A stretch of 64,000 bases of DNA from Mobula birostris. Its lineage: Eukaryota. Of this stretch, positions 6,370-55,704 are shown piece after piece; within the stretch, counting starts at the first letter, position 1; the number at the start of each line of letters is the position of its first letter. The notes beneath the pieces were generated by a model that saw only the letters and a list, made by a program, of their open reading frames with translations, ran no database searches and was not told the DNA's origin. The position numbers and the translations under genes were made by a program. The stretch spans positions 24,979,821 to 25,043,820 of the forward strand of contig NC_092379.1 of NCBI RefSeq assembly GCF_030028105.1, read 5' to 3'.

Positions 6370-9300
6370 ATGATAGAACATATAGAACACAAAACATAGA
6401 ACATAGAATAGTAGAGCGGATTACAGGCCCTTCGGCCCACAATGTTATACCGACCCTCAAACCCTGCCTCTCATATAACCCCCTCCATAAATTCCTCCAT
6501 ATATCTGTCTAGTAGTATTTTAAACTTCATAGTGTTTCTGCCTCCACCACTGACCCAGCAGTACATTCCACGCACCAACCACTCTCTGATGAAAAAAAAA
6601 CTTCCTCTAATATCACCCTTGAACTTCCCACACCTTCCGTTAAAGCAATGTCCTCTTGTATCGAGCAGTGGTGCCATGGGGAAGAGGTGCTGGCTGTCCA
6701 CTACATCTCTTCCTCTTCTTATCTTGTACACCTCTATCATGCCTCCTCTCATCCTCCTTCTCTCCAAAGGGTAAAGCCCTAGCTCCCTTAATCTATGATC
6801 ATAATGCATACTTTCTAAACCAGGCAGCATCCTGGTAAATCTGCTCTGTACCCTTTCCAATGGTTCCACATCCTTCCTATAGTGAGGCGACCAGAATTGG
6901 ACACAGTACTACAAGAGTGGCTTAACCAGAGTTTTATAGAGCTGCATTATTACATCTCTACTCTTAAACTCTGTCCCTCGACTTACGAAAGCTAACACCC
7001 CATATAGCTTTCTTAACTACCCTATCCACCTGTGAGGCAACTTTCAGGGATCTGTGGACATGTACCCCGAGATCCCTCTGCTCCTCCAGACTACCATGTA
7101 TCTTGCCATTTACTGTGTTCTTTACCTTAGAGTTTGTCCTTCTAAACTGTACCACCTCACACTTCTCTGGGTTGAACTCCATCTGCCACTTCTAGCCCAC
7201 TTCTGCATCCCACCAATGTCTCTCTCTAATCCTGGACAGTCCTCTACACTATCTACAACACCACCAACCATTGGGTTGTCTGTAAACTTGCCAACCAATC
7301 CATCTACCCCCACATCCAGGTCGCTAATAAAAAATACGAAAACTAGACGTCCCAGAACAGATCCTTGTGGGTCACCAGCAGTCACAATCGTCCAATCTGA
7401 ATGTACTCCTTCCACTACGACCCACAGCCTTCTACAGGCAAGCTAATTCTGAATTCACCTGGCCAACTTCCCTGGATCCCATGCCTTCTGACTTTCTGAA
7501 TAAGCCTACCGTGTGGAACCTTCTCAAATCCCTTACTAAAATACATATAGGTCACATCCACTGCACTACCCTCATCTATATGCCTCGTCATCTCCTCAAA
7601 GAACTCGATAGACCTGCTAGACAGGATCTGCTCTTCACAAATCGATGCTGATTGTTCCTCGTCAGACCATGATTAGTTAAGTGTCCATGGATCCTATCTC
7701 TAAGAATATTTTCCAACAGTTCTCCGACCACAGATGTAAGGCTCTGTGGTCTATAAATACCCGGTCTATCCCTACTAACTTTTATGAACAAAGAGACAAC
7801 ATCCGCCTGCCTCCAATCCTCCGGTACCATTCCTGCGGACAACGAGAACATAAAGATCCTCGCCAGAGGTTCAGCAATCTCTTCCCTTGCCACGTAGAGC
7901 AGCCTGGGGAATATTCGGTCAGGCCCCGGGGACTTATCTGTCCTAATGTATTTTAACAAATCCAACAGCTCTTCTCCCTTAATATCAGCATGCTCCAGGA
8001 CATCAACCTCACACATATTGTCCTCACCATCATCAAGTTCCCCCTCATTGGTGAAAACCGAAGAGAAGTATTCATTGAGGAACTCGCTCACTTCCACAGC
8101 CTCCAGACACGTCTTTCCTCCTTTATCTCTAATCGGTCCTACCTTCACTACGGTCATCCTTTTGTTCCTTACATAATTGAAAATAGCCTTGGGGTTTTCC
8201 TTTACCCCACTCACCAAGGCCTCCTGATGCCCCCTTCTTGTTCTTCTCAGCCCCTTCTTAAGCTCCTCTCTTGCTTACCTATATTCCTCAATAGACCCAT
8301 CTGATCCTTGCTTCCTAAACCTCATGTATGCTGCCCTCTTCCACCTGACTAGATTTTCCACGTCACTTGTCACCCATGGTTCCTTCACCCTACCATTCTT
8401 TATCTTCCTCACCGGGATATATTTATCCCTATCATCCTGCAAGAGATCTCTAAGCATTGACCACATGTCCATAGTACACTTCCCTGCAAAAACATTATCC
8501 CAGTTCACACCCGCAAGTCCCAGCCTTATACCCTCATAATTTGCCCTTCCCCATTTTTTTTTTCTTCTCCTATCTGATTCTATCCTTTTACATGATAACT
8601 ATAAAGGCCAGGGAGCGGTGGTCACTGTCCCCCAGATGCTTGCCCAATGAGAGATCTGTGACCTGACCCGGTTCATTACCTCGCACTAGATCTAGTATGG
8701 CATTCCCCTGGTCGGCCTGTCCACATAATGTGACAGGAATCCGTCCTGGACAAACTTAACAAACTCTGCCCCATCGAAACCCTTGGAAATAATCAGGTGT
8801 CAATCAACATTAGGGAAATTAAAGTCACCCATGATAACAACACTGTTATGTTTGCATCTTTACAAAATCTGCTTCCCAATCTGCTCCTCTGTGTCTCTGC
8901 TGCTACCAGGGAGCTGAAAGAATACCCCCAATAGAGTAAATGCTCCTTTCCTGTTCCTGACTTCCACACATACTGACTCAAAAGAGGATCCTGCTACATT
9001 ATCTACCCTGTTTGTAGCTGTAATAGTATCCCTGATCTGTAATGCCATACCTCCTCCTTCCCCCTCCCCACGCACATCCCTTTTAAAGTACCGAAATCCA
9101 GGAATATTGAGAATCCATTCCTGTCCTGGTACCTGTCAAGTCTCTGTAGTGGCCAGTACATCATAATTGCATGTATTTATCCAAGATTTCAGTTCAATAC
9201 CTTTGTTCCTGAGGCCTCTTGCATTGATACACACACCTCAGCACTTCTACATTACTACCTTTACACCGTTTAGTCTGCTTCTCTTTCCTCAAAGCCTCTC

Positions 9301-9850
9301 TATATCTTAGATATGGCATTACTCCATGCACTTCTTTCATTGCTGTATCGGTCCGCGTCCCATCTCCCTTGCAAATTAGTTTAAACCCTCTCGAACCACG
9401 CTAGCAAACCTACCTGCAAGCATATTGCTTCCCCCTCGAGTTCGGGTGCAACCCATCCAATCTGTACAGCTCCCAGCTTCCCCGGAATATATCCCAATGA
9501 TCCAAAAATCCAAAACCCTTCTCCCTGCACCAACTCCTCAGGCACACTTTATAACTGCCATCTCCTCCAATTGCTACCATTACTAAACGCCACACTTTAG
9601 GTCCTGTTCTTCAGCCTTCTGCCTAGTTTCCGAAACTCTCAATTCAGGACCTCATCCCTCTTCCTGCCTATGTCGTTGGTACCAACATGTATCACGACTT
9701 CTTATTGATTTCTCTCTCGTACCAGGATGCCGTGCACCCGGTCAGAGACATCCAGGACTCTGGCACCCGCGAGGCAACAAACCATGCGGGTGTCCTTCTC
9801 ACGTCCACAAAATCTCCTGTCTGCAGCCCTGACTATAGTAAACACAAAAT
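6370..9850 (-). mobile_element. CR1 LINE, 3' tail through ORF2 into ORF1 esterase, frameshifted
   Basis: (CTATGTT)-like tail at ~6372-6410. RT ORFs at 6471-8217, endonuclease fragments at 8275-9075, ORF1 SGNH-like fragments (RMVCCLAGARVLDVSDRV; LDGLHPN). Confidence 0.9.
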
Positions 9851-11464: not shown

Positions 11465-12075
11465 ATGACAAGGCTTCACTTTGTGTTTGTGTTTGCGTCG
11501 TGCTGTGTTTTTCACTTCAGTGTGATAGCGAGAGAGATGGCAATTACACATTATTCTGTAATTCTCACAACGAAGCATCTTAGCTTCACATATTTGGAAT
11601 AGTTTATATTTTTTATCTGCAGTATTCCTTTCCGAACTACAGCCTTATGGTGCTCAACGCACCATCGCAAGTTTAGCAGGATAACTATCAACAGATATAA
11701 TCTGCTGCTTATCCTGCACCGCCGATGCGGTTTCCTTCGGGAAGGAAAGATAAAAAAAAAAAAAAATAGGAAGTGTGAGTTGGCTGAAGATGTAAATTTG
11801 GCGTTGCCTCTGGCAGATATCAACTTTCCCAGATGGAAGGCGAGTTGTTCTCCAGGAGTCTGTTGGACAACTTTGTAATCGTGCATTATACCAGCACAGA
11901 CTGAAGGTAGAAATAAAATTAAGATGACAGGTCGCGGTAAATTGGCAGCCACTTCTCTGTTTTGAGCGCAGTTACTCTGCATTGCTGTCACCAATTATCT
12001 CTATGTTTTCTGGCAAACACAAATGGACCGTGCCGTGAACAGTGATGGCTGTGCATTGGATTTAAAACAAAAACA
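11465..12075 (+). pseudogene. Decayed TCR V segment with 23-type RSS relic
   Basis: Hydrophobic leader-like ATG ORF MTRLHFVFVFASCCVFHF at 11465 and acceptor AG at 11621-11622. 3' end CGT GCC GTG (like TGT GCC GTG, CAV), then AACAGTG (12038-44), 22-nt spacer and ACAAAAACA (12067-75). Confidence 0.45.
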
Positions 12076-13435: not shown

Positions 13436-15840
13436 TGTCGGGTAGTGTGGCACATAGGGCAGGAAGGGCCTGTTTCACGTTGTATTTCTATTTAAATAAG
13501 TAAATAAACAACATGCACGGTTGGGAAATTCGTAAGTTTCCAAGATAGTTACGTTCTATCAATGCCGTTATTCAAAAACAATGATGCTGCATGAAATAAC
13601 ACTGGCACTGCAAATATCCCGACACAAGCCCGGACTTAACTGTGTAGAAAACTACCTGACCTCGTCAAGGAAGTCGAAGGAAATTTGAGATCGTTTAAAT
13701 ACTGAAATTAATGAATCGGGAATAAAACAAGTATCCAAACTCATATTGAGAAAACTTCAGTTGAGTTACACAGCATTGAACGTCTGCGCGTTCGTCCAGT
13801 GAGTCTGGGACCTGCCTTCTTGATTTCCTTTCAATAAGATGAAATTGCGGTACATTTACCCTGGCCTGATTCAAACCAAACTGCCTCATGTGCGGTGAAC
13901 AATTTCAAATATCCCCATAAGGAGTGGATATATGAAAGAGCTCTGCACAAATTTTGATCGTTTTAAAAAAATTCAATTCGCCTTCATACCTGCGGCCTCT
14001 TATCCGGAGCAGTTTGTGTATGTGCTATTCAACATTTTCAGCATCTGCAGAGTGTCTTCCATCCAGGTTTGGTGTTTGGATAACAACAAAATTTGTTGAT
14101 GAAACTTTAGGCAAAATAACCGATGTCAATTAGTGATAATAATATGATAGAAGTATAGCAGTCAATTAAAGGTAACTAGAAATATTTTCCTAACGTGAAT
14201 TGCATTCAATGCTGACACAACAGTAGGGAAACAAGACAATCCTCGATTTGGGTCTGCGAAATGAGCTACATTAGCTGAGGAACCTTAAGATAAAGATACT
14301 ATTCGTCGGCAGTGATGAAGGTATCATAACAAACACCCAGCAATTTGAGAGGGGCAACCTGGTATTGATGCATCGCTATCAGTAAATCTAAGAACAAATG
14401 CTTGAGTGAGCAGTATGCCAGGTTTGAGGATAAGGAGATGACGGTAGGGCAGCAAGGTTTAAGTAAGCAACACGTAGCAGAGAAAATGGAGATTCAGCTG
14501 CCTTCAACAAGGTGCTGCAGAGGAGCATACCATCAAGAGGGAAGCCCGGATATTACAAAAAAAGGTGCTAGAATATATGGAGATTAATTAGTTTTGTGTA
14601 GAAATCTGACTTTGGTGGTTTGTTGATGTATAAATTTAATAGGTATTCGCAACTGTTCAATGGCTTCGACGTAGTGGAGGATAGGGAGGGCGTGAATGCT
14701 GCGACGGCTCTTAACCCAGGATGTTCAATTCTGTAAGTTTTTGCTGCTTAAATCATTCAGTTCCGGAAGCAGTATGTACTATGTGGGGTCCTCAGCAGCC
14801 GAGAATTTCAACCTCCTGGTGTTTTCCGCGAAAGTCACCAAAGCATGGGATCCATCGAACATTGGAGTAATCGATTCAGAATTCTCCTGCTCTGGGGGGG
14901 TATGGTGCTGTATTCGTTGGAAGTTATTATGCCCGGATTTCAGGCACTAGAGATGTTCCTTGGCAACTGTTTCGAGAACCTCACTCTTTCCGATGATTTT
15001 TTTTTTTTTTTTTTGTGATTTGTGTAATGATGTGGATGTGAAAGTAGAGAAAGTGCATAAATGTTGGTGGTATTGTGTACTAAGTAAAAAAGTTCTGACA
15101 TGTTGCGACGGAACGTAGAGAGTATGTAGAGTTCGGTGGAGAAATGAAAGACTACTTTTGAAACGAAAAAGAAAGAGTGAAATTGCGAACATTAGAAAAT
15201 AGAACTTAAAGACTGAGTACGACGTTACCTGGAGGATTCTTAGCCGTGCAGATGTAGAGATGGGTCTTGGCATCTGCAGCAGTAGATTTATCATCGCTGA
15301 CACTCAAGTTTATTTAAAACATTATCTGGTATGCTGTTCTTGATTGGACTGGATATTGTGTTTAAACGCCGCGAGAAGGTACCTCTGCAAAGATCCGATG
15401 AGAACACTAAGAGAATTGTACTAATTTCTGATCGCCTCATTATAGAGATGATGTGAAAGGTTTCGTGAGGGAGCTCAGAAAATGTGTTGTGAGGCCTCAT
15501 GGATCAGAAGCTGTCTTAAGGGGAAGTTTGGGGTAAAACAGATCTTTTCACTTTAGATCAACAATGGTTCACAGTCAACTCAATCGAAGTGCGTAAGATT
15601 ATGAAAGGCATAGAAAGTACCCCCCCCTCCCCCCCCCCGCCGGGGCGGTAATGACAAAGGCCAGAGTTCCTCTGTTTATGGTGAATTTACCGTTGATACC
15701 AGAAATAGTTTTTTTCTTCAAAGAAAAATAATGGATGAATGGAAATCCATGCTGGAGATAGTAAAAGATTCAGGAGAATTTGTATTAACATGCTACTATA
15801 TATTTACAATGTACAAAAAAAATTGAAGTTTATTGTCTTG

Positions 15841-16113
15841 GTCATTGCGGCTGGTGGTGCAGTGACATCAGCGCCGGACTCTGCAGCGAAGGTTCCCGAG
15901 TTCGAATCCAGTCGAGTCGCCCCGGGCACGCTTTCCATCCGTGCTGGGTTCAGAGTTGAGCTCGCAACTTCGCCTCGGAAAAAATTAAAAAAAATGTAAA
16001 ACAAAACTGCGCTGTGAGAAGGGCATGGGGGACCACTCACAGAATCTTTCCTCCTGACGACCACTTGAAAAAGTGGTCGCCGAATCTTTGGCAGAGTACG
16101 GCGCACACAACGA
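15841..16113 (+). mobile_element. tRNA-derived SINE
   Basis: Pol III A box TGGTGCAGTGA (15855-65), B box GTTCGAATCC (15900-09), A-rich middle and a 9-bp stem with GAAA loop (16058-79). Absent from the paralogous site (~38140). Confidence 0.7.
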
Positions 16114-16949
16114 AATGTGGGAATATTCGGATAGATAGTTCAGTCGCTCTAAATTAGAGGGAACCGCAACTTCTGACTATGAGTCCGCCGTGGATTGTCC
16201 CGTTTGATATTTTTTTGTTTTATGTTCTGTGAGATGTCCAGCGGTAGATGATCCGTCGTTTTATAATTCCCTATCTCCAACGGTTTTATAATCGTTTTGT
16301 CCTTTTTGTCCAGTTAAGGACATTTCCTTCGCAATAAGAGCTCTGAAATTGTTTTGCACAGGACTTAAGAGTAACTCTTTGCTAGCTTGTCTAAATACGC
16401 GATTATTCATTAGCTACTGATATCGAAAAGGAAAAAAAAAAGCACGAGAATTTATACAATGGCTCAGGGGAAGTTCAGGAACGAGCTTCCTCAGTTGCTC
16501 AAATATCCTGTCAACCTATTTGGGAAATAAATGAAACAACTAACTTAGATTTGAAAATATCTCAGTAGCATCTTATTATAGAATCTTCCCATGCATTTTA
16601 TGCTAAATTACATACTTTAAAATGTGGAATATTTGAGTTCTGCAGTCATTAATCACGCTCTATTCCATATTACTATAACCTCAACATAATTTCAAGATAC
16701 GATTCCTATGCTCCCCGTAACACTTGCATAATACTTTTCTGGAAAATGCGTGACATTGCCTTGAAATTGCTCAAATAATCACTCTGAGCAGATGATTCAA
16801 AACAGCGGTTTCCATGGATACGTAATCTCGTAGAGAAAGAAAATGCGCGACACATTGGTTCTTTAAAATTTTGATAATTTGTTTAAAAAGAAACGTTTCG
16901 GAATTGTCGTAAACGAATGGTCCTTAATAATTTGACGTTACAAATGGTG

Positions 16950-17483
16950 CGATGTTCGTGTCTATTTATTGTTACTTTTTTGCATGCGTTATACGGTTGT
17001 TCGCTTGTGTGTTCGTGGAACGCCCTGACTTTAGTCGCCTCCCTTGTCTGTATGTGAATGAATGAGTTGTTTTCGTTTTCATATGCAGGGTTCGTTGACA
17101 ATGTCACCAAACAGTGTTTATTGCCGTCTGTAATTATTCGGGCGACTCACTGCGGTGGAGAAATAGTTGGCAGACGGTGCAGGAGGAAAATGAAATTACT
17201 ACATCTAAGTCCTGGGAAATGTAAAACTTTACAGGATTTATTAAGTAGAAGTTCGAACATTTGGGAAATAATCTTACAGAGCCTAACACCCAGACAGATA
17301 TAGGATCTACCTGTTCTATTGTGTAAACTTCTATTTTTTTTTCTTTCACCTCTGTAAGGGAAAGACGAAAAGGAAAAAAAAAATGAACAATATCTTGACT
17401 TAGAAACACTGAGGCACTCTGTAGAAATAAGTTACTCATCGATTTAGCACATTAAAAGCCATTAGAACGGAACGATTTTCCAT
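16950..17483 (-). pseudogene. Decayed TCR delta/alpha-type V exon downstream of NAR-type J (candidate supporting V)
   Basis: Strong polypyrimidine acceptor, exon start 17351, then (K)VKEKKIEVYTIEQVDPISVWVLGSVRL. A shifted frame gives YRLPTISPPQ*VARIITDG, aligning with YRQFTSRHPEFVVRRYTDG of the intact V at 55363. Leader-like 43-nt relic at 17441-17483 with donor GATGAGT. 3' end unresolved. Confidence 0.45.
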
Positions 17484-17582
17484 GTTTGGAATGAAGACCT
17501 GTGTGAATAGTACAGTATTACACGTCGTTAATTTTTATACACATCGGTGTAAAACTTCCTAACCATTCAGTTTTACATACCC

Positions 17583-17765
17583 ACAATGCTGTAGGAACTC
17601 AGCAGGCCGGGCAGAATCTATGGAAAAGAGTTAATAGGCGATGTTTAGGGCAGAGGCAATTTATCGGGATATTCAAAAAAGCTATCTGACTTGCCGACGT
17701 ACTCCAGCATTTTGGATCTGTGGCTTTGGTTTTCAGCATCCGCAGATTTTCTCTTGTTTCCCTAT
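17583..17765. mobile_element. Decayed Penelope-like terminal repeat fragments in inverted arrangement
   Basis: 17585-17655 resembles the reverse complement of the PLE 3' end (ggaactcagcaggccgggcagaatctatggaaaagag). 17700-17760 resembles the forward tail (ctccagcattttg..cagcatccgcagattttctcttgttt). Confidence 0.5.
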
Positions 17766-18308
17766 TCTCTGTGCCCAGTCATCTTCCGTTTTACTTACAG
17801 ATCAGTCAGTTTTCATATCTGTTTTTTTTTGTTTACACGTGGGTATCAGGCTCACTCGTAACTGGGCGTCACGGCTAAATAATTGAGTCTATGGTTTCTG
17901 CATGATATAGAATTACATTGGCAATCTTCCAAGATTAAGTTACTTAGCACAGGACTTCCCTCTGAATTTATCTCATACTTGACAGGGCTATATGCAGACC
18001 TATGATCAGCGTTTCTTCTTCTGCCCACATTTCTCCTGCTGATAACACGAGAAGCTGTTCTGCATATGTGAATGAACCCTTGCTGCTCCTCCAGCACAGC
18101 ATGGCTATTGAGATGCGATGCTTTTACAATAATTGTACCTTTCCAAAGACGAGGTCCAGGACGGCTATCAAAACGTGTTATTCTTTATCATGCAGAACTT
18201 TACAGCTTCTATCTCTGAAATATTAATTAAACTTCATTTCTTTTTAAAAACAGCCCTTTCTAACTTAAAAGAAACAGCTTTATAAATTTGGCCTGTTCCG
18301 ATACTTAC

Positions 18309-18402
18309 TGACTGTGACAGTGACCGTGGAAACGGCTCCATCTACAAAGCTAGTGTAGTAATTCACTGTGATTTAACTCTCAGTCTCACTGGTACAATAA
18401 TT
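18309..18402 (-). other. NAR-type J segment with 23-RSS (cassette 1)
   Basis: J 18363->18309 (55 nt) = NYYTSFVDGAVSTVTVTV+A, followed by GTAAGT donor (phase 1). RSS on + strand: CACTGTG 18364-70, 23-nt spacer, ACAATAATT 18394-402. DGA..TVTV resembles the NAR J motif DGAGTVLTV. Confidence 0.8.
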
Positions 18403-18707
18403 ATCTCCACCTCAATGTAATCTGTAGCCGTCATTGGACAGTGTATAACTATTCCAGACTCTAAAAACATAAGAAACAACAGCCAGCGTTCCACAAAGCC
18501 CTGCGAAGTTAACTGTGAAAAAGAAATCTCTGTGAAGTGGCCATTTCATACTTTCTGAATGCCGGTTTCTTAAATTGCTGTAAACGTCGAAGAAAAAAAA
18601 AGTCCTGAAAGAGGCAATGTACAATGGAATTCACCAGGTCATAGAGGTAAAGTAATCCAACATGTGTTACTGTTTGCTGATTCCAGCGTAGAGAATATCG
18701 GGGCTGA

Positions 18708-18775
18708 GAGTTTTGTTCGATTATCCTCCGCTGTGTGTCCTAATATCGACAGTGTTTCATGTCAGGTTCAAATCG
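18708..18775 (-). other. D segment with two 12-RSS (cassette 1)
   Basis: + strand: GAGTTTTGT, 12 nt, CGCTGTG (18729-35), D core TGTCCTAATATC (18736-47), GACAGTG (18748-54; first C lost), 12 nt, TTCAAATCG (weak nonamer). Confidence 0.75.
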
Positions 18776-19091
18776 CATAACAGGATTGCTTCGGAGATAA
18801 AGGCTTCCCAACTGCAATTCCAGCATCCATACCATTGGAGTAAGATCCCATCTGAAGTAAGGAGATTGGGAAGCGGGTAAATCTTTTTCAGTTGTTGTTC
18901 GCTACCTAATGTTTGGGAAAGCTGGGTTTATAAATGCAAATTCAGAAGCGAAAAAAAGAGCTACAGCATGGACACTGAACTTCCAGTCTCATTGAAAACT
19001 ATTCTGTATAGAACGCAGGCGAAGTGATTGATTGAATTACAGACAGATTAACTACTCTCCTTAAGCTGTAGATGGTATAATTAACAGCGAG

Positions 19092-19624
19092 TATTTGGGT
19101 ACGGCGGGAATCCCTTTTCCAGTTCTGTTTATATTTATATTCAACGTTACAGAAATAGGTGGCGCTGTCTGTAACTAAAAGATTTATAGTTTTCAGGGTA
19201 ATTGTCATTTCTGATTTATTTTCCATTATACTGCATCTTCCTCCTGTGTACATACGCTCGATTCCCTTTCCGGGCTGTTTCTGTTTGAAAAAAAAAAAAA
19301 GAAAGAAATGTCCGGTTACAAAATTATCCCATTGCCTAGCATGGAACTTGCATGCGATGGTGAGAGACTGGTATTCACTTTTCGTTACCGCTGTCAGGTT
19401 CTGGGTCACGGATTGGCAGAAGAAGTCTGGAAAATAAGAAGATAAGAATATGCAGAAGCAAAGCGGCATTAGACGTGAAACACGCACCACAGATAATACT
19501 ATGAGCTCATGAGATTCCGAATCTACGTTTTCAGTTTTATATTTAACTCTCATACTGCGTAAGGTTGTGAACGGTACTCACGGCGAAAGGAGAGGCACAA
19601 CGTGACATTTAAGAGAAAGTTCAT
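19092..19624 (-). pseudogene. NAR-TCR-like V segment 1 (open L+V frame, inactivated RSS)
   Basis: Leader 19624-19582 MNFLLNVTLCLSFR+C with GTGAGT donor; acceptor AG, V exon 19426-19130: QSVTQNLTAVTKSEYQSLTIAC...KQKQPGKGIERMYTGGRCS...VTDSATYFCNVEY. The short FR2-to-GGR distance (no CDR2) is the VNAR hallmark. RSS: AACAGAA, 22 nt, ACCCAAATA. Confidence 0.85.
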
Positions 19625-19899
19625 CTTTTCCTCTCCGGGTATCGGATGGTTTATATTACAGAGAGCTAAAATGCTGTTGTAGGTTATTCCTTGAACTGGA
19701 CAGTACAATGTCGGCCGTTTGCTGTTCCAGAGATATGCAATTGCCTCACTGCTTCCGAATTACTTTTTGTGCGAAGAAAACGTCAGCTTTAATGAGCAAT
19801 AACTGTGGTTCTGTTTTCACGATTTCTTTGCAAGCTCCTCCTGCCAGTTTTAACGTCAACAGGGGTAATGCTTCGTCCTTTGAATAAATACAAAATGAC

Positions 19900-20118
19900 G
19901 GGGGAGATGGGAAAAGGAAATGACATAATTTACCAGTGCCAGGGTGAAAAGAAAACTCGTCAGGATAACTGTGAGTGTCACTAGGTGTAAAGATATTAGC
20001 AGATGTCTCTGGGAGTGTGAATCAGAATGATTGAGAACGGCGAACACGGTGTCAGAAATGGAACAAGTAATTTGTTGGACGCTGTGGCAGTTGGAGTCAA
20101 AGTTGCTGAAATTGACGA
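19900..20118 (-). mobile_element. Decayed Penelope-like RT fragment (shared with 40560-40880)
   Basis: Minus translation NFSNFDSNCHSVQQITCSISDT.. parallels the PLE RT motif FINFASNFHPALKFTWSISDT; clearer in the paralog. Confidence 0.6.
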
Positions 20119-20124
20119 GCTATT

Positions 20125-20650
20125 AAGCTCTCGCTACCTTAATCTCTGATCATAATCCATTCTCTCTTAACCAGGCGGCATCTTGCTAAATCTCCTCTGT
20201 ACCCTTTCCAATTCTTCCACATCCTTCCTATAGTGAGGCTACGAGAAACGGACACAGTACTCCAAATGCGGCCTAACCAGAGTGTTATAGAGCTGCATGA
20301 CTACCTGCATCATAGGTTTTTTTCCATTGAGAGTGGGGGAAATTCAAACAAGAGGACATGAGTTGAGAGTTAAAGGGAAAACATTTAGGGGTAACCTGAG
20401 GGGAACTTCTTTACTCAGCGAGTGGTTGCTGTGTGGAAAGAGCTTCTAGCAGAAAACGGTTGAGGCAGGTTCGATGTTGCGCTTAAAGTTAATTTGGACA
20501 GCTATATGGACAGGAACAGATTAGAGGGTTATGGGCTGAGTGCAGGTCGGTGAGACTAGGTTACAGTAAGAGTTCGGCACCGACCAGAAGGGCCGAGATG
20601 GCATGTTTTCGTGCTGTAATTGCTATATGCTTATATCAATATATGGTTAT
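20125..20650. mobile_element. Two short CR1 fragments: 20125-20300 (-) and a 3' end of another subfamily 20305-20650 (+)
   Basis: Minus piece encodes the MQLYNTLVRPHLEY region. Plus piece has the TRGHELRVKG region, a 3' UTR and a tatatggttat tail. Confidence 0.75.
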
Positions 20651-20654
20651 ACAA

Positions 20655-23115
20655 AGCCATGTTGTCTGTCCCGGATCAGACCATGAGTCTCCAAATGTCC
20701 GTAGATCCTATCTTCAAGAATCTTTTCCAACAGCATTCCCACCACAGACGTAAGACTCACTAGTCTATAATTACACGGTCTACTTCTACTACCTTTTCAA
20801 CAAGGGGAAAACATTCCCCTCTGTCCAAACCTCCGGTACCATTCCCGTAGACAACGAGGACATAAAGATCATAACCAGAGGCTCAGCAATTTCTTCCCCC
20901 GCCTCGTGCAGCAGCGTGGGGAGTATTCCGTCAGGCCCTCTGGATTTATCCGTCCAAATGTATGTTAACAACTCCTTCACCTCCTCTGCCTTAATATCAA
21001 CATGATCCAGAACATCAACCTTATGCATAGTGTCCTCACCAGAGTCAAGTTCCCTCTCATTTGTGAATACCGAAGAGAAGTATTCATTGAAGACCTCGCT
21101 CAGGCACATCTTCCCACCTTTCTCTCTAATTGGTCCTACCTTCACTCCTGTCATCCTTTTTTTCCTCACATAATTGAAGAATGCCTTGGTGTTTTCCTTT
21201 ACCCCACTCGCCCCCTTCTTGCTCTTCTCAGCCCCTTCTTAAGCTTCTTTCTTGTTACCCTATATTGACCCATCTGATCCTTGTTTCCTGAAGCTCATGT
21301 ATGCTGCCTTCTTCTAACTAACTAGATTTTCCATCTCATTTGTCACCCATGGTTCTTTCAACCTACCATTCTTTATCTTCCTCATGGGGACAAATTCATC
21401 CGTAACATTTTGCAAGAGATTTCTAAACATCGACCACATGTCCACAGTATATTTCCCCGCAAAAGCATCATCCCAATTCACACCCGCAAGTTCTATCCTT
21501 ATAGGCTCAACATTTTGCTTCCCCAATTTAAAATGTTACTGTCCTCTCTGATTCCATTATTTCCATGATAATTCTGAAGGCAAAGGAGTGGTGGTCACTG
21601 TCCCCCAGATGCTCAACCACTGAGAGATCTGTGACCTGGCCCGGTTCGTTACCTAATACTAGATCTAGTATGGAATTCCCCCTAGTCGGCCTGTCAAGAT
21701 ACTGTGACAGGTGCCAGCCAAATCTCTGTATTGGCCACTGCATCATAATTCCACGTATGTATCCAAGCTCTCAGTTCATCACCTTTGTTCCTTATGCTTT
21801 TTGCATTGAAGTACCCGGACTTTAGCCATTCCACCTTCGTACCTTTACACCGTTTATTCTGCTTCTCTTTCCTCAAAATCTCTCTACATGTTAGATCTGG
21901 CTTTACTCCATGCACTTCATTCACTGCACCATCGCTCCGGATCCCATCCCCCGTGCAAATTAGTTTAAACCCTCCCGAAAAATGCTAACAAACCTACCTG
22001 CAAGGATATTGCTCCCCCTCGAGTTCAGATGCAACCCATCCAAACTGTACAGGTCCCACCTTTCCCAGAAGAGATCCCAATGATCCAAAAGTCTAAAACC
22101 CTGGCACCTGCGCCAACTCCTCAGCCACGCATTCAAGTGTCATCTCCTCCTAGTCTTACCATCACTATCACGTAGCACTGGCATCAATCCTGAGAACGCC
22201 ACCCTTGAGCTTCTGTTCTTCAGCCTTCTGCATAGTTCCCGAAACTCACAATTCAGGACCTCATCCCTTTTCCTGTCTATGCTTTTGGTGCCAACATTTA
22301 TCACTACTTATGGTTGCTTTCCCTCTCGTACCAGGATGTCGTGCACCCAATCACAGACATCCCGGACCCTGGCACCCGAGAGGCAACAATCAATTGCGGG
22401 TGTCCTCTAACGTCCACAAAATCGCCAGTCTGCTCCCATGACTTAGCATCTCCAATGACGACAGCTCTCCGCTTCTCCGTCCCACCTTTCTGCACTACAG
22501 GGTCAGACTCAGTGCCACTGGCCCTGCCACCGTGGCTCACACCTGGCCGGTTGTCCGCACCAACAGTATCCAGGACGGTAAAGTTGCTATTCAGGGGAAT
22601 GGCTACAGGGGTGCTCTGCACTACCTGTCTACACACTTCCGCTTTTTCCCCTCTGACTGTCATACACAAACCTGCTTCTGGCAGCGTAGGTGTGACTACC
22701 TTCCTGTAGCACTCATCTATGACTACCTCATTCTCCCTTACGAGTTTAAAGTCATCCAGCTGCTACTCTAGATTTCTTACTTGGTCTTCCAGATCGTCCA
22801 GCCGCATGCACTTTTGGCAGATGTGACTCTGTGGGAGAGCGGAGTTCCCCCAAGTCTGCCACATCTCACATGAGAGGCACATCAGTGTCTCAGGAGATAT
22901 TGCAAAGACTAACTGGGAGCAAGCTCGTCCTCCGCCTCTTCTCGTCGAAGCCTCTCGTGTCAAAGCCTCAAAACTCCACACCTTCACTGGCCCACTCACT
23001 CACTGGCCGCTTTCCGCAGGTCGCTCCGCTTGAGCTACCCCTCTATTTATTTGCTTGAGCTGTTCAAACTACTTGGTCACCTGACCTCGCGTTCCCAATC
23101 AGCTGCTTTCTGCTG
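20655..23115 (-). mobile_element. CR1 LINE 5' half (5' UTR, ORF1 Zn-finger + esterase, endonuclease, start of RT), disrupted
   Basis: CLSCEMWQ..HICQKCMRL (ORF1 Cys-rich finger), RRAVVIGD (SGNH), YFNAKSIRNKGDELRAWI (APE endonuclease), KSRGPDGILP. Confidence 0.9.
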
Positions 23116-23934
23116 AGTCTGGGCTATTGAAATCATTTTTTTCGGCTGTTCCGTTCTTTATTTCAGTTATAATGTGTGCGATAAACTAAGATCGCAGTCT
23201 GGCTAGTTTTGCCGAAATATTTTTACTATACAGACAACAACATCAGCAAAGCCAGCTGCTAATAAACTCACTCAGCTGTGCCTACAATGACAAGAAATTT
23301 AACAGATGTACCTCTGTACCGTTCCGAGTATATTGTAATCCTCCTTAAATAGAAATATTGCTCATGGACTGTGAGGCACGGCATCTAGCCGTCTCTATTT
23401 ATTCAATGTGTTCGTTTAGTGATGATTAAAAGTGAGTGCACTGATGAATTCGTTTTTTTTTATTTCCACAAATATTCAAGCCGTTCATGCAGTGTATATC
23501 AAATTGAAACGAAACGACCTCTCTCTTTTCTCTGACATGATTATTCCACGCTGACAATATCACTCTTACTTTCTCAATCATGCACACTGAAACTCCCAGT
23601 TTCATATGAGCCACTGTCGTGTTTCGATTATTGGAAATGGAATGAGTAAATTATCTCTTCATGGCTAGAAGAAGAACACACCAACAATCCGAAAGCGTCA
23701 GGCGTATTTTTGTGAAATGGATTGTTATGTTTTCGCGATGCCTTCATTTCCTAATATCGAAACGAAAAAGTCTTTTCTTGAACTCTTGGAAAGTGTTTCA
23801 TTCCAGCTACAGGGTGCCAAATGGGGCTTCATGAACAACAAGTTTATCAACGATTTTCCAATCTTAATTTTTGAAGGACTAACATAAATGTGACGTAACA
23901 AATGTTCTTTGCATATTACGTGTCTTGTAATTAG

Positions 23935-26304: not shown

Positions 26305-29300
26305 GGAACATAGAACAGTACAGCACAGTACAGGCACTTCGCCCCACAATGTTGTGCAGACCCTCAAACCCTGCCTCCTATATAAACCCCCACCTTAGAT
26401 TCCTCCATATACCTGTCTAGTAGTCTCTTAAACTTCTCTAGTGTATCTGCGTCCACCACTGATTCGGGCAGTGCATTCTGCGCACCAACCACTCTCTGAG
26501 TAAAAATACCTTCTTCTTATATCCCTCTTGAACTTCCCACCCTTAACCTAAAGCCATGTACTCTTGTATTGAGCAGTGGTGCCCTGGGGAAGAGGCACTG
26601 GCTATCCTCTCTATCTATTCCTCTTATTATCCTGTACACCTCTATCATGTCTCCTCTCATCCTCCTTCTCTCAAAAGTGTAAAGCCCGAGCTCGCTTAAA
26701 CTCTGATCATAATGCATGCTTTCTAAACCAGGCAGCTTTCTGGTAAATCTCCTGTCTACCCTTTCCAATGCTTCCACATCCTTCCTATAGTGAGGTGACC
26801 AGAACTGGACACAGTACTCCAAGTGTGGCCTAACCAGAGTTTTATAGAGCTGCATCATTACATCGCGACTCTTAAACTCTGTCCCTGGACTTATGAAAGC
26901 TAACACCACATAAGCTTTCTAAACTACCCTATCCACCTGTGAGACAAATTTCAGGGATCTGTGGACACGTACCACGAGATCCCTCTGCTCCTCCACACTA
27001 CCAAGTATCCTGCCATTTACTTTGTACTCTGCCTTGGAGTTGTCCTTCCAAAGTGTACCACCTCACACTTCTCCGGGTTGAACTCTATCTGCCACTTCTC
27101 AGCCCACTTCTGCATCCTATCAATGTCTCTCTGCAATATTTGACAATCCTCTACACTATCTACAACACCACCAACCTTTGTGCCGTCTGCAAACTTGCCA
27201 ACCCACCCTTCTACCCTCACACCCAGGTCGTTAATAAAAATCACGAAAAGTAGAGGTCCCAGAATAGGACCTTGTGGGACACCACGAGTCAAAATACTCC
27301 AATCTGAATGTACTCCCTCCACCACCACCCTCTGCCTTCTGCAGGCAAGCCAATTCTGAATCCACCTGGCCAAACTTCCCTGGATCCCATGCCTTCTAAC
27401 TTTCTGAATAAGCCTACCGTGTGGAACCTTGTCTAATGCCTTACTAAAATCCATATAGATCACATCCACTGCACTACCCTCATCTATATGCCTGATCACC
27501 TCCTCAAAGAACTCTATCAGGCTTGCTAGACACGATTTGCCCTTCACAAAGCCATGTTAACTGTCCCTGATCAGACCATGATTCTCTAAATGCCTATAGA
27601 TCCTATCTCAAAGAATCTTTTCCAGCAGCTTTCCCACCACAGACGTAAGGCTCACTGGTCTATAATTACCCGGACTATCCCTACTAACTTTTTTGAACAA
27701 GGGAACAACATTCGCCTCCCTCCAATCCTCCGGTACCATTCCTGTGGACAATGAGGACATAAAGATTCTGGCCAGAGGCTCAGCAATCTCTTATATCGCC
27801 ACGTGGAGCAGCCTAGGGAATATTCCGTCAGGCCCCGTGGACCTATCTGTCCTAATGCATTTTAACAACTCCAACACCTCTCTCCTTTAATATCAACATG
27901 CTCCAGAACATCAACCTCACTCATATTGTCCTCACCATCATCGTTCCCTCTTATTTGTGAATACCGAAGAGAAGTATTAATTGAACACCTCGCTCTCTTC
28001 CACAGCCTACAGGCACATCTTCCCACCTTTATATCTAATCGGTCCTACCTTCACTCCTGTCATTCTCTTTTTTCTTCACATAGTTGAAGAATGCCTTGGG
28101 GTTTTCCGTTAACCTACTCGACAAGGCCTTCTCTTGCCCCCTTCTTGCTCTTCTCAGCCCCTTCTTATGCTCCTTTCTTGCTTCCCTAAATTCCTCAATA
28201 GACCCATCTGATCCATGCTTCCTAAATCTCATGTATGCTGCCTTCTTCCACCTGACTAGATTTTCCACCTCACTTGTCACCCATGGTTCCTTCACCCTAC
28301 CATTCTTTATCTACCTCACCGGGACAAATGTATCCATTGCATCCCGCAAGAGATCTCTAAACATCGACCACATGTCCATAGTACATTTCCCTGCAAAAAC
28401 ATCATCCCAATTCACACCCGCATGTTCTATCCATCTAGCCTCATAATTTGCCTTTCCCCAATTAAAAAAAATCCTGTCCTCTTTGATTCTATCCTTTTCC
28501 ATGATAATTATAAAGGCCAGGGAGCGGTGGTCACTGTCCCCCTGATGCTCACCCACTGAGAGATCTGTGACCTGACCCGGTTCATTACCGAGTACCAGAT
28601 CTAGTATGACATTCCCCCTGGTCGGCCTGTCCACATACTGTGACAGGAATCCATCCTGGACACACTTAACAAACTATGCCCCATCTAGACCCTTGGAACT
28701 AATCAGGTGCCAATCAATATTAGGAAAGTTAAAGTCACCCATGATAACAACCCTCTTATTTTTGCACCTTTCTAAAATCTGCCTCCCAATCTGCTCCTCT
28801 GTAACTCTGCTGCTACCAGGGGGCCTATAGAATACACCCAGTAGAGTAACTGCTCCCTTCCTGTTCCTGCTTCCACCCATATTGACTCAAAAGAGGGTCC
28901 TGCTACATTACCCACCTTTTCTGTATCTGTAATAGTATCACTGACCAGTATTGCCACCCCTCTTCCCCTTTTTACGTCCTCACTATCCCCCTTGAAGCAC
29001 TTAAATCCTGGAATATTGAGAATCCATTCCTGAGCTGGTGCCAGCCAAGTCTCTGTAATGGCCACTACATCATAATTCCATATATGTATCCAAGCTCTCA
29101 GATCATCAATTTGTTCCTGATGCTTCTTGCATTGAGGTACACACATTTCAGCCCTTCTACCTTACTGTCTTTACACCGTTTATTCTGCTTCTCTTTCCTC
29201 AAAGCCTCTCTGTATGTTAGATCTGGCTTTACTCCATGCACTTCTTTCACTGCTCTATCGCTCTGGGCTCCATTCCCCTCGCAAATTAGCTTAAACTCTC

Positions 29301-30600
29301 GCGAACCATGCTAGCAAACCTACCTCCAAGGATATTGCTCCCCCTCGAGCTCAGGTGCAACCCATCCAATCTGTACAGGTCCCACCATCCCCAGAAGAGA
29401 TCCCAATGATCTAAAAATCTAAAACCCTGCTCCCTGCACCAACTCCTGAGCCAGGCATTCAACTGCCATCTCCTCCAATTCTTACCATCTCAGTCAGGTA
29501 GCACTGGCAGCAATTCTGAGAACGTCACCCTTGAGGTCCTGTTCTTCAGCCTTCTGCCTAATTCCCGAAACTCACACTTCAGGACCTCATCCCTCTTCTT
29601 GCCTATGTCGTTGGTCCCAACATGTATCACGACTTCTGGTTGCTTTCCCTCTCGTACCAGGATATCGTGCACCCGGTCAGAGACATCCCGGACCCTGGCA
29701 CCCGGGAGGCAACAAACCATGAGGGTGTCCCCTCACGTCCACAAAATCTCCTGTCAGCTCCTCTGACTATATAGTCTCCAATGACGACAGCTCTCCTCTT
29801 CTCCGTCCCACCCTTCTGCACCACAGTGTCAGACTCAATGCCGAAGGCTCTGCCACCGTGGTTCACATCTGGTCGGTCGTCCCCGCCAACAGTATCCAGG
29901 ATGGTAAACTTATTACTCAGGGGAATAGCTACAGGGGTGCTCTGCACTACCTGTCTGCTCAGCTTCGCTTCCCCGTCTCTGACTGTCACAAAACGACCTG
30001 CTTCCGACAGCCCAGGTGGACTACCTGCCTGTAGCTCTCATCTATGACTGCCTCATTCTCCCTTATGAGTCGAAGGTCATCCAGCTGCTGCTCCAGATTC
30101 CTTACACAGTCTTCCAGATCACCTAGCCGTATGCACTTCTGGCAGATGTGACTCTGCGGGAGAGGGGCTTTCCCCCAAGACCGCCACATCTCACATGAGA
30201 GACAAATCAACGTCTCAGAAGACATTGTAAAAACTAACTGCGAGCTAGTTTGTCCTCTGCCTCTTCTCGTCGAAGCCTCCCGAGTCAAAGCCTCAAAGCT
30301 CCACTGCTTCACTGGCCCACTCACGCACTGGCCGCTTCGCTTGAGCTACCCCTCTGTTTATCTGTTTGAGCTTTTCAAAATGTTTGGTCACCTGGCCTCG
30401 ACTGCCCAATCAGCAGCTTTCTGCTGAGTCTGAGCGATTCATATCTTGATTGTCCAATCAACGCCTTTCTGCTGATCTATTCAAATCTGGATTGACTTGA
30501 TTGCACAGACCAACTGCCAAAACTGCCAGAATCTCTCGAGTCAAAGCCTCAAGGTTCCAGTCCTTCACTGGCCCACTCACGCACTGGCCGCTTTCCACTT
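26305..30600 (-). mobile_element. Near full-length CR1 LINE (~4.2 kb), frameshifted
   Basis: 3' tail at ~26305. RT ORFs 26517-28295, endonuclease 28311-29146, ORF1 29490-30324 (CLSCEMW..HICQKC; VIHVGTNDIG), 5' UTR to ~30600. Confidence 0.92.
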
Positions 30601-37989: not shown

Positions 37990-37990
<1 letters not shown>

Positions 37991-38785: not shown

Positions 38786-39049
38786 AACAAATAGCCGCTC
38801 TGTATATGTGAATGAACCCTTGCGTCTCCCCTCGCTCTGCATGGGCAGAGAAATGCACTGCTTTTACTTTAATTGTACGTTTCCTCAGACGACGTCATGC
38901 CTGGCAATCTAACCACTTTATTCTTGATCAACCTCAGCCTTATAGCTCCTATTTTCGAACTCTCAATCGAAATTATTATCTTCAGCAAAACTGCCCTTGC
39001 AAGCACCTTGAAGAAACAGCTTTATAAATTTGGTCGTTCAGTTACTTAC

Positions 39050-39127
39050 CGACTGTGAGTGACCATCTTTATAGTGAATATAGTAGTAACATCGTAATCC
39101 GACATCGGTCTCACTGGTAAAAGTATC
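39050..39127 (-). pseudogene. NAR-type J pseudo-segment (cassette 2)
   Basis: Paralog of 18309-18402. GTAAGT donor kept; 40 nt instead of 55 with the deletion after GATGG shifting the frame; heptamer decayed to CATCGTA. Confidence 0.7.
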
Positions 39128-39383
39128 GTCCTCAACTCAGTCTAATCAGCAGCCGTTATTGGAGAGTGCACCAGTATTCAGGACTTTAACAATCTTGTGG
39201 AAAAGAAAAATCCGTAAAATTGCCGCATCATTCTTTCTGGACGTCGGTTCTCTAAATTGCAGCAAATGTCAAAGTAACATCCCTGAAAGGAACAAGGTAG
39301 AATGGAATTCACCAGATCAGAGCGGGAAAGTAATCTGACATATGATATCCGCAGTATAAAATATATAATTTATTGGTGCCAAA

Positions 39384-39447
39384 AGTTTTTCTTTGATAAT
39401 CCTTCACTGTGTGGCATCAATAATCCACAGTGATCAGGTTCAAATCG
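39384..39447 (-). other. D segment with two perfect heptamers (cassette 2)
   Basis: + strand: AGTTTTTCT, 12 nt, CACTGTG (39405-11), TGGCATCAATAATC (39412-25), CACAGTG (39426-32), only 6 nt, TTCAAATCG (spacer shortened versus cassette 1). Confidence 0.8.
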
Positions 39448-39755
39448 CAGAACAGGAATGGTCTGAACAATACAGCTTACCTACTGCTGTCGCAGCTGCC
39501 ATGCTAGTGGAGCAGCGTCCCAACAGAAGGATGCGATTGGTAAGGGGGGAATCATTACCGGTTGTTGTACACTGCACAATTTTTGGGAAAGGTGGTTTCA
39601 ACCATGCAAAGTCAGAAGAGAAAAGAACTAGAGTATGCGCACGGCCAGTCCCATTGTAAACTATACTGCATGGAATGCAGGCGAAGCGCCTTGTTGAAAT
39701 TACCGGCAGATTTCACTCTGCTCCTCAAGTTATTGACGGTAGACAGTATAGCGAC

Positions 39756-40271
39756 TATTTGAGTACGCTGGGAATCCCCTTCCATGCTGTGTGAATATTC
39801 ATTTTTATATTCAACTTCACATAAATAAGTGTCGTTGTCCTTAACTACAAGTTTCATAATTTTGAACATAAGTGTCATTTCTGCTTTATTTTCTTTTCTC
39901 ATAAATCCTTGTCACGTGTACATACGCTCCCTTCACTTTCAGCGTTGTGCCTGTTTCAAGAATTATCACGTTACAAATTTAATTCTATCAATTAGCATTG
40001 AACCCGCAGGTGATTGTGAGTGACTGACATTCATATTTCGTAACTGCTGTCGGGCTCTGGGTCACGTACTGTGTGAAGAAGTCTGGAGATTAAGAATATG
40101 GAGAAACGAAATGGCATTAGATGTGAAATGTATAACATTTCCCATACTATGTCTTCAAGAAATTCCGAATCTGCCTGTCAGATTTATATTGAACTTACAC
40201 ATTGCGGAAAGTTGTGAATTGTAATCACTACAAGAGTAGAGGCACAGCGGGACGATCAAGAGAAAGTGCAT
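39756..40271 (-). pseudogene. NAR-TCR-like V segment 2 (pseudogene)
   Basis: Leader 40271-40229 MHFLLIVPLCLYSC+A (donor GTGATT). V exon from 40082: FFTQYVTQSPTAVTKYECQSLTITCGFNAN** then frameshifted ..ERMYT*..NKAEMTLMFKIMKLVVKDNDTYLCEVEY. RSS CACAGCA, 20 nt, ACTCAAATA. Confidence 0.85.
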
Positions 40272-55362: not shown

Positions 55363-55666
55363 GTATGTGTTATGCTGTCTCCGTAACACAGGAGGAAAGC
55401 TCGATTAAAACAACAGAAGGGGAAACTATCACTTTAACCTGTTCCTACAGCAATAAAGGTTATTACTTATTCTGGTATCGCCAGTTCACAAGTAGACATC
55501 CTGAGTTTGTCGTTCGGAGATACACTGATGGCACTTCTGATTATAAATCGAAATTCGCTGTCGACCGGTTTTCCGACGTCATGCTTCAATCGGTGCTGAG
55601 CTATCAATTGACCATCTCAAGGCTGCGAATGTCTGATACAGCGGTGTATTACTGTGCAGTGAGACT
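55363..55666 (+). CDS. TCR alpha/delta-type V exon, open and structurally intact
   Basis: Acceptor AG 55361-62. GMCYAVSVTQEESSIKTTEGETITLTCSYSNKGYYLFWYRQFTSRHPEFVVRRYTDG..QLTISRLRMSDTAVYYCAVRL has both Cys, WYRQ and DTAVYYC. Alpha versus delta cannot be decided from sequence alone. Confidence 0.92.
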
Positions 55667-55704
55667 CACAGTGTGGGAACTTTATAGAAACTAATACAAT
55701 AACT
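55667..55704 (+). other. 23-type RSS of the intact V
   Basis: Perfect CACAGTG (55667-73), 22-nt spacer, ACAATAACT (55696-704). Confidence 0.9.

What the first reader, a model, noticed from the sequence alone, without database searches (positions are those of the whole stretch)
16950..19624. Complete NAR-TCR-like cassette: L - NAR-type V - D - J - candidate supporting V
Seen: leader, a CDR2-less VNAR-like V, one D and a DGA..TVTV J with donor, each about 300 nt apart on the minus strand, near TCR V genes and with no IgNAR constant exon visible. Established: shark NAR-TCR is a doubly rearranging TCR-delta chain whose NAR-like VDJ splices onto a supporting V-delta; it is best characterised in nurse shark. 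Inference: this is a NAR-TCR cassette, and if the host is a batoid it would extend or clarify the known germline organisation in that lineage.
Basis: partly seen in the sequence, partly recalled or inferred. Interest (0 to 1): 0.85.

Follow-up and report, generated by a model that had tools for sequence, protein, structure and literature searches.

The report
Decayed NAR-TCR cassette in a ray
This stretch is a worn-out copy of the shark and ray "NAR-TCR" gene cassette: the leader, antibody-like V, D and J are all there, but two cutting signals are broken and the second V domain it should splice onto is missing, so it is an ordinary relic of a known system.

Summary
The leader, NAR-type V, single D and J with a splice donor are real, on the minus strand at 19624-18307. 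They belong to the NAR-TCR family, not IgNAR. The closest relative is a Mobula hypostoma two-V gene model (62% identity). In a tree the V groups with Mobula (100/99) inside a sawfish-plus-ray clade (99/97).

The cassette is neither complete nor likely to work.
- The V recombination signal has no CAC heptamer (AACAGAA).
- The 5' heptamer of the D reads GAC from the coding end.
- The a-b loop cysteine, present in 20/20 relatives, is tyrosine.
- A 15-base T-rich insert adds five residues to framework 2 (0/20 relatives).
- The J has DGAV where relatives have DGxG.
- Changes on this V's own branch are 19 non-synonymous to 4 synonymous, the neutral ratio.
- The "candidate supporting V" (17351-17137) shows no V-domain similarity by tblastn, Smith-Waterman, a profile of supporting Vs, Pfam or PDB. 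Only an RSS-like 23-spacer signal and an in-phase acceptor are there.

A dead paralogue lies at 40271-39043.

NAR-TCR is known in cartilaginous fish, including batoids. Earlier notes of this scan, which I did not check, report intact cassettes elsewhere in this genome. Interest is low.

The parts
19582..19624 (-). Leader exon 1 (MNFLLNVTLCLSFR + 1 nt), followed by a GT donor at 19581-19580
   Evidence: Sequence. 16 of 18 leader residues match Mobula hypostoma P0026. DNA match to the sawfish leader, L001 3020-3055.
19129..19426 (-). V exon: end of the leader plus an open NAR-TCR-type V region (19415-19131)
   Evidence: Pfam V-set 26.1 bits. VNARs are the top PDB hits. NAR-TCR two-V gene models are the top hits of the exhaustive search. 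62% identity to Mobula P0026. Alignment A2. Tree.
19288..19300 (-). T13 run at the core of a 15-nt insert that adds five Phe/Leu residues to framework 2
   Evidence: The insert is absent from paralogue B, from the sawfish V and from 20/20 relatives.
19090..19129 (-). Relic of the V 23-spacer recombination signal: heptamer position reads AACAGAA (no CAC), nonamer-like CCAAATACT
   Evidence: Positional homology to sawfish CACAGTG-23-nonamer and to B's CACAGCA. No CAC-type signal was found here by the scan.
18708..18775 (-). D segment (18747-18736) with a 5' 12-spacer signal (heptamer CACTGTC, which reads GACAGTG from the coding end) and a 3' signal CACAGCG-12-ACAAAACTC
   Evidence: The same 12-D-12 layout is in B and in two sawfish cassettes.
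18307..18402 (-). J signal (AATTATTGT-23-CACAGTG), J coding 18363-18309 (NYYTSFVDGAVSTVTVTV, phase 1) and GT donor 18308-18307
   Evidence: 68% DNA identity over 214 nt to the sawfish J and its upstream flank. Relatives carry DGxG.
17116..17353 (-).
   Evidence: No Pfam or PDB hit at E<=10. No tblastn hit. Smith-Waterman rank 274 of 424. Supporting-V profile -0.8 bits, E 69. The RSS-like site is one of six in 128 kb.
39043..40271 (-). Paralogous cassette B (leader, V, D, J), fully dead: at least six stops and a frameshift in V, a 6-nt deletion in the 5' D spacer, a 16-nt deletion in J
13530..13800 (+). V pseudogene relic most like supporting V-deltas (..KLQLS....C..), with an internal stop and no good signal; inverted relative to the cassette and just outside the A/B duplicated unit
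   Evidence: tblastn E 0.004. Smith-Waterman score 63, at the 99th percentile. Profile 13.3 bits, E 0.021. Sequence.
55374..55704 (+). Open TRAV/DV-type V with signal CACAGTG-22-ACAATAACT
   Evidence: Pfam V-set 60.1 bits. Signal scan. Sequence.

Best explanation
This is a decaying, almost certainly non-functional copy of the NAR-TCR cassette of a batoid, most like the devil ray Mobula.

How intact copies are arranged (sawfish reference): leader, then NAR V with a 23-spacer signal, then a D with 12-spacer signals on both sides, then a J with a 23-spacer signal. The J donor is followed about 1.35 kb later by a leaderless supporting V-delta with its own 23-spacer signal.

How intact copies work (established knowledge): RAG joins V, D and J. 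The J donor then splices the joined exon onto the supporting V-delta, which itself rearranges to TRDD/TRDJ and is spliced to C-delta.

What this copy retains: the same layout and an open V.

What this copy has lost:
- Both signals needed for V-to-D joining have lost the essential CAC.
- The a-b loop cysteine is gone.
- Five extra residues sit in framework 2.
- The second glycine of the J motif is gone.
- The supporting V is gone, or eroded beyond recognition.

At most a D-J join could still form.

Shown here: the anatomy, the homology, the defects and the neutral substitution pattern. Inferred: loss of function.
For: Family:
- The exhaustive search gives NAR V + supporting V gene models of sharks and sawfish as top hits, 1e-21 to 1e-6.
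- The closest relative is Mobula hypostoma LOC134352442, at 62% identity with a near-identical leader.
- Tree: A+B+Mobula 100/99; batoid clade 99/97.
- Framework 2 reads GHFF..KQ without Trp, the published NAR-TcRV trait (PMC1845163).

Reference anatomy:
- Two sawfish cassettes both have V CACAGTG-23, 12-D-12 and 23-J with DGTG. An intron of about 1350 nt leads to a leaderless supporting V with CACAGTG-23-ACAAAAACC.

Defects:
- V heptamer AACAGAA; 5' D heptamer GACAGTG from the coding end.
- Cys15 to Tyr and Pro7 to Leu at nearly invariant columns; 5-residue insert unique among 21 sequences.
- J has DGAV.
- A-branch changes are 19 non-synonymous to 4 synonymous, against a site ratio of 3.99.
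- No supporting V anywhere on the minus strand of the window.
- The paralogue B is plainly dead and also lacks a supporting V.
Against: - The V reading frame is open over 95 codons, with both canonical cysteines.
- Leader, splice sites, the 3' D signal and the J signal are intact.
- An RSS-like 23-spacer site (6/7, 6/9) lies 1.15 kb after the J donor on the right strand. An in-phase acceptor and an open frame precede it, which could be the last trace of the supporting V.
- A 16-nt exact match to the sawfish J-to-supporting-V intron lies at 17375-17360 (E 0.17).
- Loss of function is inferred from sequence. No recombination or expression data were available.
- The substitution count is small (23 changes) and polarised with a distant outgroup.
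Confidence: 0.8

Rival explanations
1. A complete, functional NAR-TCR cassette, with the stretch 17351-17137 acting as its supporting V.
For: - Open V, intact leader and splice sites, good 3' D and J signals.
- The acceptor at 17353-17352 is in phase with the J. The ORF runs to an RSS-like CGCAGTG-23-GCAATAAAC.
Against: - The ORF is 72 codons, against about 103 in real supporting Vs.
- It has no V-set signal in Pfam, PDB, tblastn, Smith-Waterman (rank 274/424) or a supporting-V profile (E 69).
- The V and 5' D heptamers lack CAC.
- The a-b loop Cys is lost and a 5-residue insert is present.
- The substitution pattern is neutral.
Confidence: 0.05
2. An orphan but still usable NAR V-D-J unit. 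It would rearrange through weak signals, and its J would splice over a long distance to the supporting V of another cassette on the same strand.
For: - Open V; intact J donor in phase 1.
- Earlier scan notes report other cassettes tens of kb away in this genome (not checked by me).
Against: - No supporting V lies on the minus strand in the 18 kb downstream within the window.
- Both V-to-D signals are crippled.
- The cysteine thought to bond to the supporting V is lost.
- Substitutions are neutral.
Confidence: 0.08
3. An IgNAR heavy-chain cluster V-D-J rather than a TCR element.
For: The V is VNAR-like by sequence and by predicted fold. VNARs are the top PDB hits.
Against: - One D, where nurse-shark IgNAR has three (my knowledge).
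- No Trp in framework 2.
- No protein of the IgNAR heavy-chain format was recognised among the 24 hits at E<=0.001 of the exhaustive search. Of the 20 whose names were looked up, none is IgNAR, and NAR V + supporting V models lead the list.
- No C-domain ORF downstream of the J in the window.
- Nearest relatives are spliced onto V-delta.
Confidence: 0.01

Closest known systems
NAR-TcR / NARTCR, the doubly rearranging TCR-delta of cartilaginous fish (Criscitiello, Saltis and Flajnik 2006, as described in PMC1845163 and PMC12227049)
   Same: - Split leader and a short VNAR-like V without the framework-2 Trp.
- Its own single D and J.
- A J ending in a phase-1 splice donor instead of being followed by a constant exon.
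- A setting among TCR V segments.
   Different: - The a-b loop Cys is replaced by Tyr.
- There is no leaderless supporting V-delta with a CDR1 Cys.
- The V and 5' D heptamers are broken.
- A 5-residue insert sits in framework 2.
Mobula hypostoma LOC134352442 (P0026), a germline read-through model of an intact cassette
   Same: - Leader 16/18 identical; V 62-66% identical.
- The J has the same length and the VTVTV ending.
- Lineage-specific residues are shared (Val/Ile at the F72 column, Asn at the D78 column, Val at the A91 column).
   Different: - P0026 keeps the a-b Cys, has no insert and has DGTG in J.
- P0026 continues into a full supporting V with a CDR1 Cys, within a 3.0-kb gene span.
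- Its DNA could not be fetched.
Pristis pectinata cassettes LOC127576467 (L001) and the P0034 locus (L002)
   Same: - Same order and spacer logic: V-23, 12-D-12, 23-J.
- DNA homology in the leader, V, 5' D signal, a D-J intron block and the J flank.
   Different: - The sawfish copies have canonical CACAGTG heptamers.
- They have a supporting V about 1.35 kb after the J, with a perfect 23-spacer signal.
IgNAR V (VNAR) of sharks
   Same: - Single-domain V fold without CDR2; GGR motif after framework 2.
- Top PDB matches by sequence and by fold.
   Different: - VNARs keep the framework-2 Trp, use three Ds and are followed by IgNAR constant exons.
- Identity here is only about 25-30%.

Membership tests
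NAR-TCR cassette | NAR-type V with a typical split leader peptide | tested here: met
   Leader exon 19624-19582, GT donor, AG acceptor, in phase with the V. The feature is as stated in PMC1845163.
NAR-TCR cassette | V lacks the canonical Trp of the WYRK motif | tested here: met
   GHFF..KQ in place of WY.Q, as in 20/20 relatives. Feature from PMC1845163.
NAR-TCR cassette | Conserved cysteine in the a-b loop of the NAR V (putative interdomain bond) | tested here: not met
   Tyr (TAC) where 20/20 relatives and paralogue B have Cys.
NAR-TCR cassette | Short VNAR-like V without a CDR2 / C'-C'' block | tested here: met
   Q1 to the second Cys is 91 residues, or 86 without the insert. Relatives have 82-87. 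It aligns end to end with VNARs.
NAR-TCR cassette | Own D and J arranged V-23 / 12-D-12 / 23-J | tested here: met
   Spacers measured. Same layout in two sawfish cassettes.
NAR-TCR cassette | Recombination signals competent (CAC at the coding-proximal end of each heptamer) | tested here: not met
   V: AACAGAA. 5' D: GACAGTG from the coding end. The 3' D and J signals are canonical. That CAC is essential is my knowledge of RSS biochemistry, not tested here.
NAR-TCR cassette | J followed by a splice donor leading to a leaderless supporting V-delta with a CDR1 cysteine | tested here: not met
   The donor is present, but no supporting V was found on this strand in the window.
NAR-TCR cassette | Linked to TRDD/TRDJ/TRDC and expressed as V-D-J-V-D-J-C-delta | not testable with these tools
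   There is no C exon in the window. The rest of the scaffold and RNA data are not available.
IgNAR cluster | Three D segments and IgNAR constant exons after the J; Trp in framework 2 | tested here: not met
   One D. No C-domain ORF downstream. No Trp.

The most novel reading that the evidence does not exclude
Two readings are not excluded.
- The acceptor / 72-codon ORF / 23-spacer signal unit at 17353-17116 is a real rearranging exon so diverged that it no longer scores as a V domain.
- Orphan NAR V-D-J units without their own supporting V are still used, by long-range splicing to the supporting V of another cassette.

Either would be a new way of building the two-V delta chain.
Probability: 0.04. 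Interest if true: 0.6.

Novelty: new member of a known kind. Interest (0 to 1): 0.15.

Why it matters
On its own it matters little. It is one decayed copy of a receptor gene cassette that is already described in sharks, chimaeras and batoids. Intact copies are annotated in sawfish and devil ray.

Its modest value is comparative. Cassettes A and B show how these units die:
- loss of the CAC heptamers;
- loss of the interdomain cysteine;
- homopolymer growth inside framework 2;
- loss of the supporting V.

They also show that the ray TRA/TRD region holds duplicated, LINE-riddled cassette units. A whole-locus census of intact against dead cassettes would be the useful product, not this copy.

Tried and rejected
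1. I first read the missing framework-2 Trp as a defect. I dropped this once the relatives and PMC1845163 showed it is a family trait.
2. The candidate supporting V at 17351-17137 was tested with Pfam, PDB, tblastn with nine supporting Vs, tiled Smith-Waterman and a supporting-V profile. All were negative.
3. Other RSS-like sites (61130-61092 on the minus strand; 60787-60825 and 12038-12075 on the plus strand) have no V or J next to them.
4. A V-like pattern 4.6 kb downstream of cassette B (34440-34200, minus strand) has C..Y, LCQ..IHW, GRI and IYC at V-like spacing. It is marginal (7.2 bits, E 1.7) and abuts a repeat motif. I did not rely on it.
5. No A/B homology exists in the J-downstream interval (A 18053-16366 against B 38793-38398), so the paralogue does not help to place a lost supporting V.
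6. The AlphaFold model has mean pLDDT 71. Foldseek puts VNARs and VH domains together at TM about 0.5. This fits a V fold but does not discriminate.
7. DNA of the Mobula, Mustelus and Scyliorhinus cassettes could not be fetched because the files are too large.
8. Criscitiello 2006 and Ott 2021 are not held in the library.
9. The tree has only one VNAR row, typed from the alignment, on a long unresolved branch. It therefore does not separate IgNAR from NAR-TCR by itself.

Full report
**What is there.** On the minus strand I find the following:
- A leader exon at 19624-19582 with a GT donor.
- A 155-nt intron.
- A V exon from 19426, whose V region 19415-19131 is open.
- A 12-nt D at 18747-18736, with a 12-spacer signal on each side.
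- A J at 18363-18309, encoding NYYTSFVDGAVSTVTVTV. It ends in phase 1 and is followed by GTAAGT.
- The J signal AATTATTGT-23-CACAGTG, just upstream of the J.

The V scores 26.1 bits on Pfam V-set against a cut-off of 26. Its best PDB sequence matches are VNARs, aligned end to end without a CDR2 block. The gaps between segments are about 370-380 nt.

**It is more than chance.** A paralogous unit, B, lies at 40271-39043. It is part of a duplication (14113-20118 against 35939-40779) that is 67-77% identical. An intact cassette of the sawfish Pristis pectinata (L001) matches the window at DNA level in the leader, the V, the 5' D signal, a D-J intron block and the J with its upstream flank, all in the same order.

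**Which family.**
- An exhaustive profile-free search of 1.84 billion representative proteins returned 24 hits at E<=0.001. The leading ones are gene models from horn shark, basking shark, bamboo shark, smooth-hound, catshark, epaulette shark, whale shark and sawfish. Each reads NAR V, J and then a V-delta.
- The word-indexed search found one closer relative: Mobula hypostoma LOC134352442 (P0026). It is 62% identical in the V. Its leader is MNFLLNVTLCLCFRHFFC, against MNFLLNVTLCLSFR.FFC here.
- In a maximum-likelihood tree, A, B and the Mobula V form a clade (100/99). That clade sits inside a batoid clade with three sawfish Vs (99/97). It is well separated (100/99) from supporting V-deltas and from the window's own TRAV/DV-like V.
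- Only one VNAR row was available, and it sits on a long unresolved branch. The tree alone therefore does not separate IgNAR from NAR-TCR.
- Other evidence does. Venkatesh et al. (PMC1845163) list the NAR-TcRV hallmarks as a typical leader, a cysteine in the a-b loop and no Trp in the WYRK motif. The associated V-delta has no leader and has a CDR1 cysteine.
- This V has GHFF..KQ with no Trp, like 20/20 relatives.
- There is one D.
- No Ig or TCR constant-domain ORF lies in the 18 kb downstream of the J.

**Why it is not complete and probably not functional.** Two sawfish cassettes serve as the intact reference. Both have:
- V ending in CACAGTG-23-nonamer.
- A D with CAC-type heptamers and 12-nt spacers on both sides.
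- GGTTCTTGT-23-heptamer before a J with DGTG.
- A 1.35-kb intron leading to a leaderless supporting V that ends in CACAGTG-23-ACAAAAACC.

Cassette A departs from this in seven ways.
1. The homologous heptamer position after the V reads AACAGAA. B still has CACAGCA. No CAC-type signal follows the V.
2. The 5' D heptamer is CACTGTC, which reads GACAGTG from the coding end. B and both sawfish copies read CAC. From established RSS biochemistry (my knowledge), the coding-proximal CAC is the part RAG cannot do without. Both partners of the V-to-D join are therefore crippled, while the D-to-J signals remain canonical.
3. The a-b loop Cys is Tyr (TGC to TAC). The nearly invariant Pro7 is Leu.
4. A 15-nt T-rich insert with a T13 core (19300-19288) adds five Phe/Leu residues to framework 2. 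It is absent from B, from the sawfish and from 20/20 relatives.
5. The J has DGAV where relatives have DGxG.
6. I polarised V-exon changes with B and the sawfish V. The A branch carries 19 non-synonymous and 4 synonymous changes, against a site ratio of 3.99, so omega is about 1.2. With omega 0.3 about 10 synonymous changes would be expected; by my own binomial estimate, not a tool result, P is about 0.005.
7. No supporting V is present.

**The candidate supporting V.**
- An AG acceptor at 17353-17352, in phase with the J.
- A 72-codon ORF ending at 17137.
- An RSS-like CGCAGTG-23-GCAATAAAC at 17154-17116.

A real supporting V has about 103 codons. The ORF gives no Pfam or PDB hit at E<=10. 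It gives no tblastn hit with nine supporting Vs at E<=50. Its Smith-Waterman score is 33, below the window median (rank 274 of 424). It scores -0.8 bits (E 69) against a profile of supporting Vs.

In its favour:
- Only six sites in both strands of the window reach 6/7 plus 6/9 with a 22-24 spacer, and two of those are true signals.
- A 16-nt exact match to the sawfish J-to-supporting-V intron lies at 17375-17360, at a collinear distance from the J (E 0.17).

I therefore give perhaps one chance in three that this is the last trace of a supporting V. It is not a V domain now. B offers no help: its J-downstream interval shares nothing with A's.

**Surroundings.**
- Much of the window is LINE copies, with reverse transcriptase, AP-endonuclease and GDSL-esterase ORFs.
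- The only open conventional V is a TRAV/DV-type segment on the plus strand at 55374-55664, with CACAGTG-22-ACAATAACT.
- A V relic most like supporting V-deltas lies on the plus strand at about 13530-13800. It has an internal stop and no good signal. It is inverted relative to the cassette and lies just outside the duplicated unit.
- No TCR constant exon is in the window.

**Comparison and novelty.**
- NAR-TCR was described in nurse shark in 2006 and found in elephant shark in 2007 (PMC1845163).
- A 2025 study maps NARTCR V segments in chromosome assemblies that include a stingray (PMC12227049).
- Intact two-V models from sawfish and devil ray are in NCBI.
- Earlier notes of this scan report several cassettes, some intact and expressed, elsewhere in this same genome. 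I did not check those.

This locus is thus one more member, and a dead one, of a known kind.

**Limits.**
- Loss of function is inferred from sequence only.
- The Mobula DNA could not be fetched.
- The structural model is of modest confidence (pLDDT 71). Foldseek ranks VNARs and VH domains together, which fits a V fold but is not decisive.

Noticed in passing
window 13530-13800 (+): V pseudogene relic closest to NAR-TCR supporting V-deltas (KLQLS....C motif). It has an internal stop and no usable signal. It is inverted relative to cassette A and lies 300 nt beyond the end of the A/B duplication.
   Followed up: partly
window 55374-55704 (+): Open TRAV/DV-type V with a perfect heptamer and a 22-nt spacer. 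I could not find a clean leader exon: the nearest ATG exon (about 55225-55260) has a stop at codon 6 and the wrong phase.
   Followed up: partly
window 18505-18364 and 18635-18594 (-); L001 4122-4260 and 3987-4029: Non-coding blocks upstream of the J signal and in the D-J intron are conserved between this ray and sawfish (68% over 214 nt including the J; 77% over 43 nt). They may be a regulatory or accessibility element of the cassette.
   Followed up: no
window 34200-34440 (-): V-like residue pattern (C.Y, LCQ..IHW, GRI, IYC at V-like spacing) 4.6 kb downstream of the dead cassette B. It could be B's eroded supporting V. It is marginal (7.2 bits, E 1.7) and is followed directly by a repeat motif.
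   Followed up: partly
window 3174-9837, 20125-23134, 26306-30445, 41341-45141, 47401-49060, 57444-59792: Multiple LINE copies (reverse transcriptase, AP endonuclease, GDSL-esterase ORFs), 64-93% identical to each other, fill much of the space between V units.
   Followed up: partly
window 17582-17714: Two inverted copies of a motif (CACAATGCTGTAGGAACTCAGCAG and its diverged complement) lie in the J-downstream interval. Similar motifs are at 10862, 34149 and 53572. This looks like a small foldback repeat, so part of the interval where the supporting V should be is repeat-derived.
   Followed up: partly
window 12038-12075 (+): Strong RSS-like site AACAGTG-22-ACAAAAACA (nonamer 8/9) with no V, D or J recognisable next to it on either strand.
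   Followed up: partly
window about 37970-38010 (-): A trinucleotide microsatellite (it translates as poly-Asn) sits in the B unit downstream of its J.
   Followed up: no
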